Positions 55,930-64,000 of a DNA stretch of 64,000 nt are shown piece by piece. Under the pieces are notes generated by a model. The model searched no databases. It was not told the origin of the DNA and worked only from the letters and a program-made list of their open reading frames with translations. Location: the NCBI GenBank assembly GCA_001179505.1, contig CDMY01000200.1:105801-169800 (forward strand), in the 5' to 3' direction. The position numbers and the translations under genes were made by a program. Each line of letters opens with the position of its first letter. Position 1 is the first letter of the stretch. Origin of the DNA: Vitrella brassicaformis CCMP3155. Its lineage: Eukaryota > Protista > Chromerida.

Positions 55930-56562
55930 GCGGTTGCTTGCGCGTGTCGATGAGTGGTCTGCACCTGTTCTATAGCATCTTTTTCGATGACCGCTCATCG
56001 GCATTTGGTCTCGTGTGTGCGTGGCTGCTTGGATGAGTGGCCTGTACCTGTTCTTTGGCGTCTTTTTCTATGGCCGCTCGTCGGCACTTGGTCTTGTGTG
56101 TGCGTGGCTGTTGGATGAGTGGTCTGCACCTGTTGTCTGGCGTCATTTTTCGATAACCATTCATCGGCATTTGTTCGTGTGTGCGTGGCTGCTTGGATGA
56201 GTGGTCTGCACTTGTTATCTGGCGTCTTTTTTAATGATCGCTCGTCGGCATTTGGTCTTGTGTGTGCGTGGCTGTTGGATGAGTGGTCTGCACCTTTTGT
56301 CTGGCGTCTTTTTCGATAACCGTTCATCGGCATTTGTTCGTGTGTGCGTGGCTGCTTGGATGAGTGGCCTGCACCTGTTCTCTGGCGTCTTTTTCTATGA
56401 CCGCTCGTCGGCATTTGGTCTTGTGTGTGCGTGGCTGTTGGATGAGTGGTCTGCAGCTGTTGTCTGGCGTCTTTTTCGATAACCGTTCATCGGCATTTGT
56501 TCGTGTGTGCGTGGCTGCTTGGATGAGTGGCCTGCACCTATTCTCTGGCGTCTTTTTCGATC
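55930..56562. repeat. Minisatellite with alternating A (83 bp) and B (80-81 bp) monomers
   Basis: Units start at 56013(A), 56096(B), 56177(A), 56260(B), 56340(A), 56423(B) and 56503(A, partial), with a degenerate unit from ~55930. All begin GTGTGTGCGTGGCTG(C)TTGGATGAGTGG. Confidence 0.95.
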
Positions 56563-57069: not shown

Positions 57070-58030
57070 TCATTCAAGTAATTTGCGATAGACAATATTG
57101 CGACAGATCGGCGGGCCGTCACAGATACGCTCAGGCGACGTGAGCAAGAGCATATCGCACCCGTAACGCACACGAGTGAGGGCCGTGTAGAGGTGGCCAT
57201 GCTGGAAGAAGTGGTGACGAATCTCGATCACGATCTTTTCCAGTGTTTGTCCTTGACTCTTGTGGACCGTCTCAGCGTATGCCGGCTTGACCTGCACACA
57301 TTAAGAGACGCGTATGCAGCTTGCGTGTCTGTCTGTCTGTCTCTCTGTCTCTCTCTCTCTCTCTCTGTCTGTGTGTGTCTATGCATGTCTAACCGGATAT
57401 TGACAGCGGTTAAACTTCAGGCCACGCACGTTGCGTGGCTGGATAGTGAAGTTGATGCGTGGTAGCACGAATGTCTGCCATGGTGAGGCGCCCCCATTCA
57501 CCTTCTTGACCTCGATCATCCCCTCGCCGCGGGGCCCTTTATAGATCACCTTCTCGTTGTTGTACAACTCGTAGCGGCGTGACATGTTCCGCAGCACCAG
57601 ACATACCACGCCCGGCTTGAGCTGCAGCTTGTGTGGGGGCTTTGGCGACTCTTCTTGTGCGGCAAGGAACTCCTCGTCGTGGTGACCGGCCTGCTGGTCG
57701 TTCTGCAGGAATCTCTCAAAGGCCGTGTGGGTGTACTCCTTGCCGTTCATGCGTTGAATGATGGTGTCATTCAGCGCGTCCACCGCCTTGTTGACTGGAC
57801 AGAGGATGGCGCGTGTGGCACACGCTTCTGGGTCGCGGTTGTAGAGCTCGTCGGGGAAAGCGAATTCGATGGCGTCTTGCTCGCTGAAGGTGTGTTGGTG
57901 GTTGAGCTTGATCCAATGGGTCTCGTCACCGCGGCGAAGAGAAGGGTCGCTCTGAGGGTCGATGCAAAAAGTGGGCACCTCGCAAGGCACATCCACAGAC
58001 TGGTATGTGAGCATACGCAGCGAACACACA

Positions 58031-58062
<32 letters not shown>

Positions 58063-61000
58063 AGAGCGACACCACACACACAGACAGGAGCTGGTCCACA
58101 GGGGTTCTACTGCCACCTCTACTCATTTGTCTTAGCTCTTGTTGTCGCTGTGCTTGTTGCACGCATCGAGACGCCTGTCTTTTGGGCTCGACGCGTCGCA
58201 ACATTTGTGCGTAGGGGCAGTGAACACTCGAACCACTGAGACACTCACTGCACAGGGCACTCACCCTCTCTTGGCAGTGAACGTACCTTCAAACACATGT
58301 CTGTATAGGCAGCATCGTTTGCTGAACGCTGCACGCGCTTGAGCTCTCGCCGATTGAGTTGACCGTAGAGGTCCGAGCCGCGAAGGGAGGCCTTCAGTGT
58401 TGTTGTTTCATTCGATTCCTCGCTGCGTGGAAGGACGGGGGGCAGCTGGCGAAAGTCACCCGCAAAGATGAAGACCTTGCCGCCGAAGGGCAGCTTGCTT
58501 TTCATGACGTCTTGCAGCATGAGGTCAACAGCTTCAATACACTTGCGGTGCGCCATGCTGAACCAAAGACGCACGTTGCAGTCTATGTGTGTGTGTGTCT
58601 CTGTGTGTATGGCACCTGATCTCATCCCACACGATGACCTTCGCTTTTCGCAGCAGGTCCGCTTTGGGCGAGTTAACGCTCATGGTGCATCGAACCTCCT
58701 CGCGAGTGATGTTATCGACGACGGGGATCTTGTGGAGGCCGTGTGCAGTGTGGCCGCCGATATAGTTGAGTGCAGCGAGTGCTGTTGTTGCGGTTGCCAG
58801 AGCGATGTCGCCGCGGCTGCGCACCGCAGAGAGCACGCATCGCAGTAGCGTGGTCTTGCCAGCACCACCTAAACGATACGCATGCGGACTTGTGTCATTT
58901 GTTCACACCAGTGGTTGTGTGAGTCGATGTGTACCGGGAGCTTTGATGAGACCCGCGAACGGAACAGGGTCGCCACCCCCTCTCGGATAGATGTGCTGCA
59001 TGATGTCGTCAAACAGGTCGCTCTGCTCCCTGACGTTCTTGACCATGTTGTACAGCTCCTCGTAGTAGCGCTTGATGGCAGTTCGACTGCCGTAGGCTCT
59101 GCGCTCGCTCTGCTCCTCGGCAGTGAGGTTCTCGGGCTCTGGCAGACCACAGTCGGTGTTCGACTTGCCGTTCTCCTGCAGGTCCTCAGAAATCTCCCGC
59201 AATAGACGCTCGCGCGCTGCCTCAGGATCGTCGACTTCCTCGTAGTCGTCCACCATGAATGGCAGGTACTGATTGAAGATGCTCTTCGCTGAGCACTCGT
59301 GGTTGAGGATCAGGATCATGAACAGAAACCGCAGCTGGTATGGAAAGACGGCCTGCTCCTCCACAGCCTCTCGCATCACGTTCTCCACATATGTGTGTCC
59401 CTCCAGCAGCCCCGCCGCCTTTGCTGCCTCGCCGTACGTGTCGTATGTGACGTCGTTGATCGTTCGAATGCTCTGCAACCAAGCAAAACAATGCTCATGT
59501 GTCATGTACTGGTGTCCGAGCTTGAGTGTGTGTATGCGTGTCTCACCTCAAATGTGTGTCGCGCGACGGAGCTCTTCAGCAGCAATCGCAGGTAGTACCT
59601 CTCGCCCTGGCTCGGATAGGAGCTGCCCAGCCGCGTGCAGTGGCGCTGCCATCCCTCTCGCTGGTAGAAGGTGTGGCCCGTCAGCGTTTGGAACTTCTCC
59701 AGCTTCGCAGGGACTGTTTGGGTGCCGCGCTTCATGGCGAAGCGCTGGAAGAACTGCTGGTAGGTCAGCTTAGTGAGGTCCATCTCTTCACCCTTGATAG
59801 AAACCGAGGACGGTCGCTGCAGCCAGTGCTCGATGAGGCTGGGGCCGGGAGGGAAGATCTTGCCCCGCTCGTCCTTGCCGTGCACTCTCTGCACTGCTGC
59901 CCGATGAGATGGAAGGTCGACAGTAGGGCTGTCACGGACGGCTCGGCTCGGTCCAGTGGATTTGATGGCCGCAGATGCGGTGGCACGCCTCGCTTGCACA
60001 CAGCACCCGGCCCTGCTGGTAGTCACGCACCTCGTCTCGTCCTGGTTGCTTGGTGGGCTCTTGAGTGTGGGTGCTTGTGAGAAGGCTCGCCATGCGTCTT
60101 GCGGTATGCCGCTGTCGCTGTCGCTTCGCTGAAGGTTGCTCGTCGTCGGGTGGCGAGTCGCCGTCGTCCGCTCCCCGCTTGCGCTTCCTGTCGGCTTCTT
60201 GATGCACACTGACGCGAAAGGCGCTCTTCTCGGGCTTGTACATGTACTTGTATCTGCGGCGCAGCGAGGAGCCAAACACAACCACATTTGTGCGTGGGCG
60301 ATTTCTTGCTGCTTCATCCATTTTCCTTTTGGCTGCTTACAGGTAAGCGATGACGTTGGTCGATGCAGCACAGTCCACATAGAGGTGACAATTGAACTCT
60401 GCCAGCAGCTGCGGGCAGTAGGGTGCCACCCAACGGTCTTCCTCTTGTCTGCGGCGATAGATGCAGTGGCCGCGGGCGTCGAACTGCGTCTCGGCGCTGA
60501 GCGGCTGTGGGAACCCATACTTGCAACGCTCCACAACGGGCTCGTGAGCCCTCAAGCAGCGGTGATACTCCTTCAGGCTGTCCTCGTCTCGGCACCGAGC
60601 GCTGCACTTGTGGATCATGAACGTCTCCACGAGCTTGCGGAGCCGTCGATTGTGTCTGGGGACCTCCGCACACACGAACAGGTCGACGTCTGGTCCGGTC
60701 AGTGGGTGACGATCATGGCGAACGGTGATGTGGGCGTGGCTAAGACCGCGCTTCTGGTACTCGATGACGGACATCAGGTACACCGACTTGCCCAATGGGC
60801 CATTGCGTAGGCGTTTGAGCAGGGCACGTAGCTTCAGATGGAACACACGGCTGGTCAGGTCAGGGCGGTCGTACGCGTTCTGCCCTGCAAACACGAGCGA
60901 AAGCACAGCCACCCAGAACGCACAACGACATGCTAGACTGCTGTGCTGCTCGGCTCGTTGACTGTGTTTCTCACCTTGCTCCAGATTTTCATGAATTTCT

Positions 61001-62476
61001 TTCCAGCTTCCATTGCAGGTAATTGTGATGAACCATGAGGGCTTGCCATACTGCGCCACGATAGCAAACGCGTCTTGACACAGCTTTTTGTAGTAGCGCT
61101 CTGACCCGAGGAAACTGCTTGGAAGCAGAACAAAGCCAGCCTTGGCGTGATCCTCCATGTCCTCATTCTCCGCGAGAAGCTGCTGGTACTCGGGGTCTTC
61201 CTCTCGCTGTAGCTCACTCAGCTTAAGCAGGCGAAGCTGGTTGTTGCGGATGAAGTTGAGTCGCTCGTCTTCGATACGCGAGAACATATCGAGCGTGTAC
61301 CCCTGCCCAAGCCGAGGCATGGTGTGCAGCAGCGGCTCCTTGAGTAGCCGCTGGCGCATGTACTTTAGCTGTGTCCAGAATCGCTCGCAACGTCTCGCGG
61401 TGCCCTCTAAGACGTCTGGCTCGTGCCACGCGCGAGTGTAGAACCGCCGATCGATCATGTTCTTGATGTAAGTGCTCTCAGCAAACAGATGGAAGTTGCC
61501 CCTGCCACACACACAACAACACACATACATGCAGCGCCACTTACAGCGAATGCCCTGTCAGCGACACGCACCTGGATTCGATGGGCATGGACGGATACCA
61601 GCCAGGCGTCCCTTGAGCAAAGAGCAGGGGATACTGCAACGGCTCGTAGACCGGCGATAGCACGTCCACGAACTCTGTCGACTCGCCTCTACGTGTCGAC
61701 TTCTTGAGCGAGATGCACACCTTGCGCTGCTGTGGAAGATAGGCGGAGCTCGAACACGGCAGGACCAAGCACACGTCGTCGGCCTCTTCTTTGAACTTGA
61801 ACTCGAGAATTATGTCCTTTCTCCCGTGTTCGACCAGCCGCCCGAAGGCGCGCAAGTCACGGACGAAGGGGTTGTTTTCGCGAAGGATTTCCTGACCAAC
61901 AAATAGATACAGCCATGAATGCCGCAGTTCCTTATGCTATTCGGTGTGTCGTTTGCTTACTTTCAGCTCTGTAACGAGGTACTCGTAAGCTTGCCGTTCC
62001 CTGTCGTGCGCTGCTGCGCTGCCCGTCTCCTTGCACATCTGGTCGACGCGCTTTTTGAGCTCCGTCTCAGCTGCCTTGTTGTCAAACATCAGCCACACAA
62101 TCGGGTTGTCCTCTGCAGAGATGATGCGATGGTACACACGACCATGAATCCTCACGTTGCCCCAGTCTTGTGGAAGGGATGCGGCGAGGTCTGAACTGGT
62201 ATCGTAGCCGATAGCTGTCATGGCAAAGGTGTTGTTGAGATAAAGCGACTTTGCACGCAGCTCCTTGCCGTAGCGTGACGCAAGCAGGCTACGCAGCTCA
62301 TCAGGCACGGAAAGGTTGTCCAGCACTGTCTTGCCCTGCTGGCAGCAAAACGATCCACCTTCGCCCTCCCACACGAGAGCGTCGCAGTAGTCACAGGCGG
62401 TGCGCTTCGGCAACACGTGCTCGTCAGGCAGTTCGACGGTCGGGTCCAGCAAGGGTTGGTCACACGCACCGCTCTC
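57070..62476 (-). pseudogene. Helitron Rep/Helicase coding region, intron-rich, with a net +1 frameshift at ~59930-59950
   Basis: Exons splice in phase except at IHWTEPSRP* (TGA 59932-59934). The downstream frame (…TVDLPSHRAAVQRVHG…GERYYLRLLL) is offset, and a GAGCC duplication is visible there. Confidence 0.85.
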
Positions 62477-62590
62477 TGTACACAGTAAGCGTCACCCTTG
62501 TCTCTCTTCGCTCTCTCTTCGCTCTCCTGTGTCTGTCTGCATGTGTCGTGTCTCTCTCAGGTCACCTGGAAAATGAAGACACAGTAGCTC

Positions 62591-63876
62591 TCAAAACCGT
62601 CCTGCTCGCTGGAACGCCGCCTTCACCTCCTTGCGCGTCGCTCGCTCGATGCGGAAGCCCTCCATGACTGGTCTGCCCGTTGCCTCTTTGGGTCGCACGT
62701 GCACCTCGAAGCAGCCCCGCCCCGCGCCGTTGAAGTTCACTCTCATCCAGCAGAGCTTCCGATTCACGCCCTGTGACCGCTCGTGCTCTCGCAGCAGCTC
62801 GTGCGCGAAGCGACTGACGCCATTGCGCGTGAGCAGCGGCTCTCGTGTTGTCTCGTCCTCGCCGCTTGCCTGCTCCGTCTTGGCAGGCTGTTTGTCCTCC
62901 TCCGTCACCACGAAACACTCCAGCTCAGCGTCAGCTTCGCAGCGCTCTCGGATTCTCTCAAAGGCACTCGTGATATCGTCCTGCGTGAGTTTGCGTGGCT
63001 TGCTGCAGCGCGTCTGCCTCCTCCCCTCAAACTTCGCTCGGAATAGTGCAGACTCCCAGCTCCACCGAATGCGGGGAGGCGGGTCGATTCGACACACGTG
63101 GCCATATGCATCAATCAGCGAATTTGCATGCGCTTTCGCCTCTGCGAAAAGCAAACAGACAGATCATTTGCAATTCGCCCAACGCAACACAGAGACATAC
63201 ATACATACGTACCTTCCTCACTCAGATAACAGACCCTTTTTGTTTCGGGCTCTGCATCATTCTCGAAACACGCTCGGAGAGGTCGGGACACAGTGAGCGG
63301 TGCGAAGCGTCCAGTGGATCTTCCTCGCTTTTTCCCTTTCCGTGCTCCCTTTCTCGCGCCCACATCAGGATCCCCACTGCCGTGCTCTTCCGTCTGAGCT
63401 TGTGTCTTTTCTCCATTCCCTGTCGGTTCACCCATCGTCGCATCGTGTGGTGCTCCTGCCGATAGCACTGTGTCCCTCACGTCAGCGACGATAGCACTCA
63501 GCCGCACCACCACCCGCCGCTCGACGTCCTGCCGCCCACCCAGCCACCCCCACACCTCGCCAGGCACAGTGAGGTGTCGAATCTCCCCGACAGACATCAG
63601 CAGCAGCGCCTCTCTCAGCCAGTCCGACAGCGTGTCATCATTGACTGCACACGTCACGTCACCATAGCCTGTCGTGTGGCCGTGGTTGGTGCTAAGGTCG
63701 TCCCAGAAAGTGACCGAGAACGTGACCCGAGCGTCAGCGGTGGGGCGACGGCCGTCCCCATCACACACAATCTGGTGGCGCACAGCAAGTGGGGTCACCA
63801 CTATCGCTTGTCTGAGGGATGCCTGCCCCTCAGAGACACGCCGTCGCCGGCGAGCCGGCTCTCCACTGCGGTCCCG

Positions 63877-63913
<37 letters not shown>

Positions 63914-63994
63914 GCGCACACCAGACAACAACGCACATGAGATGCATGCAGTCATTCCCCTCCGCAAGCCCTCTCACCTGCTGTTGCACGACAT
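62591..63994 (-). CDS. FKBP-like domain + two AP2-like domains; probable N-terminal part of the Helitron RepHel protein
   Basis: ATG 63994 micro-exon joins in phase 2 to the exon with RHQIVCDGDGRRPT…VTFSVTFWDD…LREALLLMSVGEIRHLTVP. This joins in phase 1 to ORF 62591..63154. TGA 62591-62593 is followed by an in-phase GT donor leading to RepHel. Confidence 0.6.
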
Positions 63995-64000
63995 GCTAGT

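What the first reader, a model, noticed from the sequence alone, without database searches (positions are those of the whole stretch)
62470..63994. FKBP-like domain at the N-terminus of a putative FKBP-AP2-AP2-ZnF-Rep-helicase polyprotein
Seen: 63786-63487 encodes VRHQIVCDGDGRRPTADARVTFSVTFWDD…VTCAVNDDTLSDWLREALLLMSVGEIRHLTVPGEVWG, matching the FKBP pattern (GDG-x-x-P…V-x-V-x-Y…EAL-x-x-M-x-VGE…L-x-I-P) but lacking several active-site aromatics. It splices in phase to the AP2-like exon. That frame hits TGA (62591-62593) in the context TTT TGA GAG, explicable as a CGA-to-TGA CpG transition. It then continues ELLCLHFP to a phase-1 GT donor (~62566) that joins the phase-1 acceptor of the RepHel zinc-finger exon, which has no usable ATG of its own. 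Established: Helitron accessory domains include RPA, OTU protease and AP endonuclease; FKBP is not one I know. Inference: one ancestral ORF with a catalytically dead FKBP used as a chaperone or histone/protein-interaction module.
Basis: partly seen in the sequence, partly recalled or inferred. Interest (0 to 1): 0.82.

Follow-up and report, generated by a model that had tools for sequence, protein, structure and literature searches.

The report
FKBP-like exon fused to broken Helitron
In the alga Vitrella brassicaformis, a copy of the genome's own amplified, enzyme-dead FKBP-like domain is spliced in frame onto a Helitron transposase gene that is still transcribed but broken, so this is a one-off domain capture and not a standard part of Helitrons.

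Summary
Window 63813-63475 (minus strand) encodes a true FKBP fold: AlphaFold pLDDT 86.8, all top PDB matches are FKBPs, and the family profile scores E 6.5e-8 against them. Most pocket residues are lost.

A spliced RNA contig from one public run joins this exon to the next exon. All introns are GT-AG. The TGA at 62593-62591 is present in the RNA.

A diverged sibling Helitron on contig C326 has introns at the same two positions and phases and reads without a stop there. The TGA therefore interrupts a once-continuous frame.

Three parts of the reading fail:
- The sibling has a different N-terminus, and none of about 66 other FKBP-like copies lies near a Helitron. FKBP is a single-locus acquisition from a host family.
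- RepHel also carries two frame changes near 59950-59918, so the copy is dead.
- "AP2" is unsupported. There is no Pfam hit, and only two Vitrella proteins match among 1.84 billion.

The gene's 5' end lies beyond the contig end. Earlier notes of this scan described the FKBP-like family on other DNA of this genome.

The parts
63873..64000 (-). Unresolved 5' region. The window ends at the contig end.
   Evidence: The annotated model CEL93983.1 is 5'-partial.
63213..63872 (-). Exon carrying the FKBP-like domain and a 91-codon linker. It is contiguous in RNA.
   Evidence: X4 record 6, 0 differences. The frame is open.
63475..63813 (-). FKBP-fold domain (113 aa modelled), a member of the host's amplified FKBP-like family. 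It lacks the family's stop codon right after the domain.
63142..63212 (-). Intron 1 (71 nt, GT..AG, phase 1). The sibling C326 has a candidate intron at the same position and phase.
62566..63141 (-). It is shared only with the C326 sibling, at 36-42% amino-acid identity depending on the alignment.
   Evidence: 2 matches among 1.84e9 proteins, both Vitrella; no AP2; pLDDT 45.8.
62591..62593 (-). In-frame TGA, present in DNA and RNA, 25 nt before the exon's end.
62476..62565 (-). Intron 2 (90 nt, GT..AG, phase 1). The acceptor is conserved in C326.
61961..62475 (-). RepHel N-terminal zinc-finger exon. It has no in-frame ATG before the Cys cluster. It is 69-71% identical to C326 at the amino-acid level, with dN/dS 0.085.
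60341..61891 (-). Three exons (61891-61572, 61501-60975, 60884-60341) encoding the Rep (HUH) domain.
   Evidence: Helitron_like_N, E 2.1e-42.
59547..60253 (-). Exon with two frame changes (about 59951-59938 and 59921-59918) and the resulting TGA at 59934-59932. The sibling keeps a single frame here.
   Evidence: RNA contigs of two studies (X4, X6) cover it without differences.
57070..59472 (-). Remaining exons encoding the PIF1-type helicase. The RNA-supported exons are 59472-58935, 58868-58616 and 58557-58074. Further coding frames lie at 58116-57379 and 57297-57070, with the stop at 57072-57070.
   Evidence: PIF1 1.3e-16, Pif1_2B, UvrD_C_2.

Best explanation
This is the 5' part of a single-copy, transcribed and correctly spliced but dead Helitron transposase gene of Vitrella brassicaformis.

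In this copy, the N-terminal part normally carried by this Helitron lineage has been replaced. (The sibling on C326 has a different region there, possibly OTU-like.) The replacement is one copy of the host's own amplified FKBP-like domain.

That domain normally ends small host proteins, with a stop codon directly after it. Here the stop is missing, and the frame runs on in this order:
1. a 91-codon linker;
2. a GT-AG intron;
3. a lineage-specific orphan module;
4. the RepHel zinc finger, Rep and helicase.

So a fused frame, FKBP-like / orphan module / RepHel, probably existed once as a local capture or recombination event.

The frame is now cut by a TGA (62593-62591) and by two frame changes near 59950-59918. 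The main mRNA can therefore give at most a protein of about 415 aa (FKBP-like plus orphan module), counted from the in-frame ATG at 63909.

The FKBP-like part lacks most pocket residues. It could act only as a protein-binding module, not as a prolyl isomerase.

Shown here: the fold, the paralogy, the splicing, the lesions and the absence from the sibling. Inferred: the order of events, and any function of the fusion.
For: FKBP fold.

Host origin of the domain:
- About 66 genomic paralogues lie in tandem clusters. The nearest (53% amino-acid identity) are on C842, C485 and C481, and none is near a RepHel hit.
- Family members, including complete MMETSP transcript ORFs, end right after the domain.

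One spliced RNA contig joins the FKBP exon, exon 2 and the ZnF/Rep exons.

Sibling C326:
- Exon 2 and the zinc finger lie in one open frame.
- It has candidate introns at the same positions and phases.
- Protein homology with the window starts at exon 2.
- There is only a weak hint of homology in the last 45-90 nt of exon 1 (7 of 1000 shuffles).

The linker is open for 91 codons and in phase.

Lesions.

Strong constraint on the ZnF exon (dN/dS 0.085) against 0.61 on the FKBP-like part.

The HELIANO survey lists 20 domains stably captured by Helitrons. FKBP and AP2 do not occur in its main text (PMC11417382).
Against: - The junctions linking the FKBP exon to the Helitron exons come from one contig of one run. 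A k-mer contig cannot prove that both junctions sit on the same molecule.
- Element termini could not be found, and the contig ends at 64000. Whether the FKBP exon lies inside the Helitron is therefore unknown.
- Homology of the exon 1 tail with the sibling is not significant at protein level (z 1.6).
- The nearest FKBP paralogue is only 53% identical, so no recent donor is identified.
- The annotated model CEL93983.1 uses other splice sites that skip the TGA. A minor isoform without the stop is not excluded.
Confidence: 0.55

Rival explanations
1. FKBP-like is a true accessory domain of a once-autonomous Helitron family. One polyprotein (FKBP / orphan modules / ZnF / Rep / helicase) transposed with it, and this is simply the last decayed copy.
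For: In-frame architecture on one spliced RNA contig. A continuous frame across exon 2 and the ZnF in the sibling. An open 91-codon linker. Helitrons are known to fix captured domains upstream of RepHel (PMC11417382).
Against: No second copy carries the domain. The only close sibling has another N-terminus. None of about 66 FKBP-like loci is near a RepHel. The exon 2 profile finds only two proteins in 1.84e9, so the lineage is tiny. dN/dS on the FKBP-like part is 0.61.
Confidence: 0.15
2. Domesticated or host gene. The functional product is the protein of about 415 aa (FKBP-like plus orphan module) ending at the TGA. The RepHel exons are a decaying, still spliced 3' UTR.
For: The first frame is fully open to the TGA and is transcribed. 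RepHel downstream is broken in two more places. FKBP-like domains are combined with many different partners in this genome (P0006, P0008 and P0019; earlier notes).
Against: A stop followed by eight spliced introns would normally expose the mRNA to nonsense-mediated decay (general knowledge). Constraint on the FKBP-like part is weak (0.61) and on exon 2 moderate (0.36, with dS saturated). No orthologue is available to test conservation.
Confidence: 0.12
3. Two independent genes. A host FKBP-like gene ends at the TGA, and a Helitron sits next to it with its own start. The single RNA contig merges overlapping transcripts.
For: Contigs cannot prove a single molecule (tool warning). The FKBP-like family is a host family.
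Against: Exon 2, which carries the TGA, is Helitron-lineage sequence shared with C326, where it is in frame with the zinc finger. The junction 62566|62475 is present in RNA. The ZnF exon has no in-frame ATG before the Cys cluster.
Confidence: 0.1
4. The TGA is decoded, by programmed read-through or selenocysteine, as a Gag-Pol-like device to set the ratio of short and long products.
For: The stop is in frame, and the downstream frame stays open for 750 codons.
Against: The sibling has sense codons throughout this linker. Two frame changes further down break the long product anyway. The TGA is followed by GAG CTA, which is not the read-through context I know of (UGA CUAG; my recollection, not tested).
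Confidence: 0.03

Closest known systems
Helitron RepHel genes with captured extra domains (OTU, RPA, AP endonuclease and 17 others in the HELIANO survey, PMC11417382)
   Same: A host-derived protein domain sits upstream of the Rep and helicase domains, in the same transcript and reading frame. The sibling copy shows a weak OTU-like Cys motif at that place.
   Different: FKBP is not among the domains listed in that paper's main text. Here the domain is in one copy only, not at a conserved place in a family of copies, and the transposase is broken.
Canonical FKBP-type prolyl isomerases (FKBP12, bacterial Mip; Pfam PF00254)
   Same: Same fold, a five- to six-stranded sheet around one helix. The conserved Trp and the M-x-x-G-E motif are kept.
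   Different: The window copy is below Pfam's threshold. The equivalents of Tyr26, Phe36, Asp37 and Phe99 (FKBP12 numbering, from my knowledge) are replaced, and the loop carrying Tyr82 is shortened. It is probably not an isomerase.
Vitrella's own amplified FKBP-like domain family (about 66 loci; earlier scan notes speak of 150 or more)
   Same: Clear paralogy: 25-53% amino-acid identity, the same invariant positions and the same degraded pocket.
   Different: In family members the domain ends the protein, with a stop directly after it. Here the stop is absent and the frame continues into Helitron exons.
Chimeric transcripts of gene fragments captured by Helitrons (known from maize and other plants; my knowledge)
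   Same: Host coding sequence and Helitron sequence sit on one spliced mRNA.
   Different: Those are mostly non-autonomous elements carrying fragments of several genes. Here the host domain is fused in frame to the transposase itself.
AP2/ERF and ApiAP2 DNA-binding domains (PF00847)
   Same: The only similarity is a predicted pattern of two strands and then a helix, seen twice in exon 2 of a low-confidence model.
   Different: There is no profile match, although the genome holds at least 150 recognisable AP2 domains.

Membership tests
FKBP-type domain (PF00254) | FKBP fold | tested here: met
   AlphaFold pLDDT 86.8. The top Foldseek matches in the PDB are all FKBPs, TM 0.73-0.77.
FKBP-type domain (PF00254) | Profile match above Pfam's gathering score | tested here: not met
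   The window copy scores 13.9 bits against a cut-off of 21.1. Only 4 of 25 paralogues reach E 0.01. The family profile does match solved FKBPs at E 6.5e-8.
FKBP-type domain (PF00254) | Conserved aromatic ligand and catalytic pocket | tested here: not met
   Only the Trp is kept. The Tyr of the V-H-Y-T-G motif, the Phe-Asp pair and the last-strand Phe are replaced in the window copy.
FKBP-type domain (PF00254) | Prolyl isomerase activity | not testable with these tools
   Needs an enzyme assay.
Helitron RepHel transposase | Rep (HUH) domain followed by a PIF1-type helicase | tested here: met
   Helitron_like_N E 2.1e-42; PIF1 E 1.3e-16; Pif1_2B; UvrD_C_2.
Helitron RepHel transposase | Intact reading frame (autonomous element) | tested here: not met
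   TGA at 62593-62591 and two frame changes near 59950-59918, all present in RNA contigs.
Helitron RepHel transposase | Element termini (5' TC, 3' hairpin plus CTRR) and insertion site | tested here: inconclusive
   No close copies exist to define the ends. The contig ends at 64000. CTAG motifs downstream of the stop prove nothing.
Stably captured Helitron domain (sense of PMC11417382) | The same domain at a conserved place in the copies of one Helitron family | tested here: not met
   Sibling C326 lacks it. No other FKBP-like locus lies near a RepHel match.
AP2 / ApiAP2 (PF00847) | Profile match to the AP2 domain | tested here: not met
   No hit at E up to 1. The genome scan lists 150 AP2 domains but not this exon or its sibling. 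No solved AP2 structure is matched.
AP2 / ApiAP2 (PF00847) | Three-stranded sheet packed on a helix | tested here: inconclusive
   The model from two sequences has pLDDT 45.8. It shows strand-strand-helix twice but is not reliable.
Vitrella FKBP-like family | Sequence paralogy | tested here: met
   66 matches, the best at 53% identity.
Vitrella FKBP-like family | Domain at the C-terminal end, with a stop right after it | tested here: not met
   Family members stop 1-6 residues after the last strand. The window copy reads on for 91 codons.

The most novel reading that the evidence does not exclude
The link is not an accident. A recently active Helitron lineage carried the host's fast-evolving FKBP-like recognition module at the front of its transposase. 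Helitron capture is the mechanism that shuffled this module onto many unrelated Vitrella genes, and this locus is the only surviving physical link between cassette and vehicle.
Probability: 0.05. Interest if true: 0.8.

Novelty: new variant of a known kind. Interest (0 to 1): 0.38.

Why it matters
Helitrons are known to pick up host domains, but how a captured piece becomes part of the transposase is rarely caught in the act. Here RNA evidence shows an in-frame, correctly spliced fusion of a host protein-binding fold to RepHel. A sibling copy preserves the state before the swap.

The locus also flags two lineage-specific features of a chromerid alga, a relative of the apicomplexan parasites:
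- an orphan module at the front of its Helitron transposases;
- a large family of pocket-less FKBP-like domains.

The value is limited, because the fusion is single-copy and dead. It says little about how living Helitrons work.

Tried and rejected
- Aligning siblings at the TGA. The only sibling (C326) is 69-73% identical in DNA and cannot be aligned in the 16-18-residue linker around the stop. CGA-to-TGA stays untested.
- Element ends. Searches with the upstream 1.5 kb and the downstream 3.9 kb found no further copies, only simple repeats and FKBP paralogues.
- Homology of the exon 1 linker with the sibling. It is not significant at protein level (z 1.6 and 1.1) and marginal in the last 45 nt of DNA.
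- Word search with the 273-aa FKBP frame: no hits.
- AP2 tests: Pfam, a PDB profile search, an Atlas feature search and a fold model all gave nothing usable. The low-confidence model was not sent to fold search.
- OTU in the sibling: Pfam gave nothing. There is only a motif-level match to viral OTU domains at E 0.17.
- Literature: no paper links FKBP with Helitron proteins, and none treats Helitrons of Vitrella.
- The spliced model was joined only inside scripts, to check frames. Searches were run exon by exon, by reference.
An AP2 profile-to-profile comparison was therefore left out.
Full report
**Source**

The window is contig C200:105801-169800 of a 72.7-Mb, 1064-contig genome, and it ends at the contig end. 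An exact look-up of the annotated protein names the organism as Vitrella brassicaformis CCMP3155. The local gene model is CEL93983.1, an 'unnamed protein product, partial' of 1044 aa.

**Observation**

The minus-strand frame 63936-63115 is open and holds the FKBP-like stretch. The TGA is at 62593-62591. Eight codons later there is a GT at 62565-62564.

Pfam finds, downstream on the same strand, Helitron_like_N (E 2.1e-42), PIF1 (1.3e-16), Pif1_2B and UvrD_C_2. A Helitron RepHel gene therefore runs from about 62475 to 57070.

**Is it an FKBP domain?**

- Alone, the window copy is below Pfam's threshold (13.9 bits against 21.1).
- The genome holds about 66 paralogous stretches, many in tandem clusters on C1000, C364, C748, C373 and C225.
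- A profile of 25 of them (A1) matches solved FKBP/Mip structures at E 6.5e-8. In the large protein collection it reaches PF00254-bearing proteins at about 1e-7.
- With this alignment, AlphaFold gives pLDDT 86.8 and pTM 0.80.
- The best Foldseek matches in the PDB are all FKBP domains (TM 0.73-0.77).

The fold is settled.

The pocket is not kept. The Trp and the M-x-x-G-E motif remain. In the window copy the Tyr of the V-H-Y-T-G motif, the Phe-Asp pair and the last-strand Phe are replaced, and the loop that carries Tyr82 in FKBP12 is short (residue numbering from my knowledge).

**Where the domain comes from**

Family members are small proteins in which the domain is the C-terminal end, with a stop 1-6 residues after the last strand. 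This holds in six-frame reads, in annotated Vitrella proteins and in complete MMETSP transcript ORFs.

The nearest relatives (53% amino-acid identity, 68-79% DNA identity over about 220 nt) lie on C842, C485 and C481. They sit in a duplicated segment with unrelated genes and without Helitron sequence.

No FKBP-like locus lies near any of the RepHel matches on C326, C227, C571, C115 or C366.

Earlier notes of this scan, on other DNA of the same genome, describe the same family as a shuffled, fast-evolving FKBP-like last-exon cassette. I confirmed only the C-terminal position and the varied N-terminal partners.

**RNA**

Of the public runs that hold the stretch, X4 and X6 give spliced contigs and X1 gives unspliced ones.

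One X4 contig of 3361 nt lies on these blocks:
- 63872-63213
- 63141-62566
- 62475-61960
- 61500-60974
- 60883-60341

The table of pieces is truncated and lists no block between 61960 and 61500. Joints at 61890|61960 and 61500|61571 imply a further exon at about 61890-61571.

Another X4 contig, and an X6 contig from a different study, cover 60245-59547, 59472-58933 and 58866-58616. The X6 contig alone adds 58557-58074.

After the one- or two-base shifts that the tool itself indicates, all nine introns are GT..AG on the minus strand. There are no letter differences, so the TGA is in the RNA.

Limits: the two key junctions come from one contig of one run, and a k-mer contig does not prove that both lie on one molecule.

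**The sibling**

The only Helitron close enough to compare is on C326. DNA identity is 69-73% from window 57407 to 62846.

There, the homologue of exon 2 and the zinc-finger region lie in one 769-aa open frame. Its DNA shows GT..AG intervals at exactly the positions and phases of window introns 1 and 2. Both are of in-frame length, so the frame reads through them.

Between the end of the exon 2 homology and the conserved E-S-x-A-C-D-Q start of the zinc-finger exon, the sibling has 18 sense codons. The window has 16 positions, one of which is the TGA.

It cannot show which codon stood there.

**What the sibling does not share**

Protein homology begins at the first residue of exon 2. Upstream, the sibling has an unrelated region of about 340 aa. 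Pfam finds nothing there. There is a motif-level match (E 0.17) of its D-x-x-C-F-F-H-C-L-A stretch to viral OTU proteases.

The last 30 codons of window exon 1 show hints of homology only. There is the same T-V-S-R word at nearly the same distance from the donor, and 7 of 1000 shuffles reach the observed DNA score over the last 45 nt. The protein z-score is only 1.6.

My reading is that the front of the gene was swapped within exon 1. This step is inferred.

**The gene is dead**

In the spliced sequence, which I joined only in scripts to check frames and never sent to a search or fold tool, the frames run as follows:

| Stretch | State |
|---|---|
| 63870 to 62594 | open, 402 codons |
| 62593-62591 | TGA |
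| 62590 to 59935 | open, 750 codons |
| about 59951-59938 | first frame change |
| 59934-59932 | resulting TGA |
| about 59921-59918 | second frame change |
| 60551 to 58248 | another frame open, 673 codons |

The sibling keeps a single frame through the same 40 nt. RNA contigs of two studies agree with the genome there.

The annotated model avoids the first TGA by using other splice sites than the RNA contig shows, and it ends at the stop caused by the first frame change. From the in-frame ATG at 63909, the major mRNA would give 415 aa.

**Constraint**

By the Nei-Gojobori method, dN/dS is 0.085 for the zinc-finger exon and 0.36 for exon 2 (with dS saturated), both against the sibling. It is 0.61 for the FKBP-like part against its nearest paralogue, much like the 0.67 between two host paralogues.

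**'AP2'**

- Pfam AP2 does not hit exon 2 at E up to 1.
- A PF00847 scan of the genome lists 150 AP2 domains but not this exon or its sibling.
- A two-sequence profile finds no solved relative.
- In 1.84 billion representative proteins, that profile finds only the two Vitrella models themselves.
- The fold model is poor (pLDDT 45.8). It shows strand-strand-helix twice, which is compatible with many small DNA-binding folds.

I therefore call exon 2 an orphan, lineage-specific module. AP2 is a lead, not a finding.

**Known context**

The HELIANO survey of 404 genomes reports 20 extra domains stably included in Helitron-like elements, among them OTU, RPA, endonuclease, B3, HSP20 and UCH. Its criterion is a conserved position in all copies of a family. 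FKBP and AP2 do not occur in its main text (PMC11417382). No paper in the library links FKBP with Helitron proteins or treats Helitrons of Vitrella.

**Verdict**

The biological claim shrinks. This is a single-locus fusion of a host cassette to a Helitron gene that has since decayed, not a new standard accessory domain. The 'AP2' label is unsupported. Where the protein starts is unknown, because the contig ends.

Interest is moderate: a clean, RNA-backed snapshot of domain acquisition by a Helitron, in a little-studied lineage.

Noticed in passing
G000 contigs C1000, C364, C748, C373, C225, C485 (loci L009-L024, L029:5210-5500): About 66 copies of a short FKBP-like domain, many in tandem clusters on both strands. 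Most end a small protein, with the stop directly after the last strand. dN/dS between two close copies is 0.67. Earlier notes of this scan describe the family.
   Followed up: partly
L035:546-2855 (C326, minus strand): The sibling Helitron has a 769-aa open frame that reads through two in-frame candidate introns. Its N-terminal 340 aa are unrelated to the window and carry a Cys motif resembling viral OTU proteases (E 0.17 only).
   Followed up: partly
window 55949-56561: Tandem array of an 82-nt unit (7.5 copies, 84% matches; a 163-nt double unit at 92%), about 500 nt downstream of the RepHel stop. It may or may not belong to the element.
   Followed up: no
window 62470-63490: The GenBank model CEL93983.1 skips the 91-codon linker and the TGA by using a donor right after the FKBP domain (about 63487|63486) and a donor near 62624. 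The RNA contig instead shows exons 63872-63213 and 63141-62566 uncut. This is either a minor isoform or a predictor's workaround.
   Followed up: partly
window 61508-61546: A 39-nt stretch inside an intron also occurs on a different contig in all four runs, with unrelated flanks on both sides. It is a short dispersed repeat.
   Followed up: no
G000 contigs C290, C269, C488, C781, C708, C367: At least 150 recognisable AP2 (PF00847) domains, many in dense clusters of neighbouring frames. This is a large local expansion of AP2 genes.
   Followed up: no
window 58074-58284: The X6 RNA contig runs uncut through a stretch that has no counterpart in the sibling and borders an (AC)12 repeat at 58024-58048. 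It is probably a retained or unrecognised intron in the helicase part.
   Followed up: no
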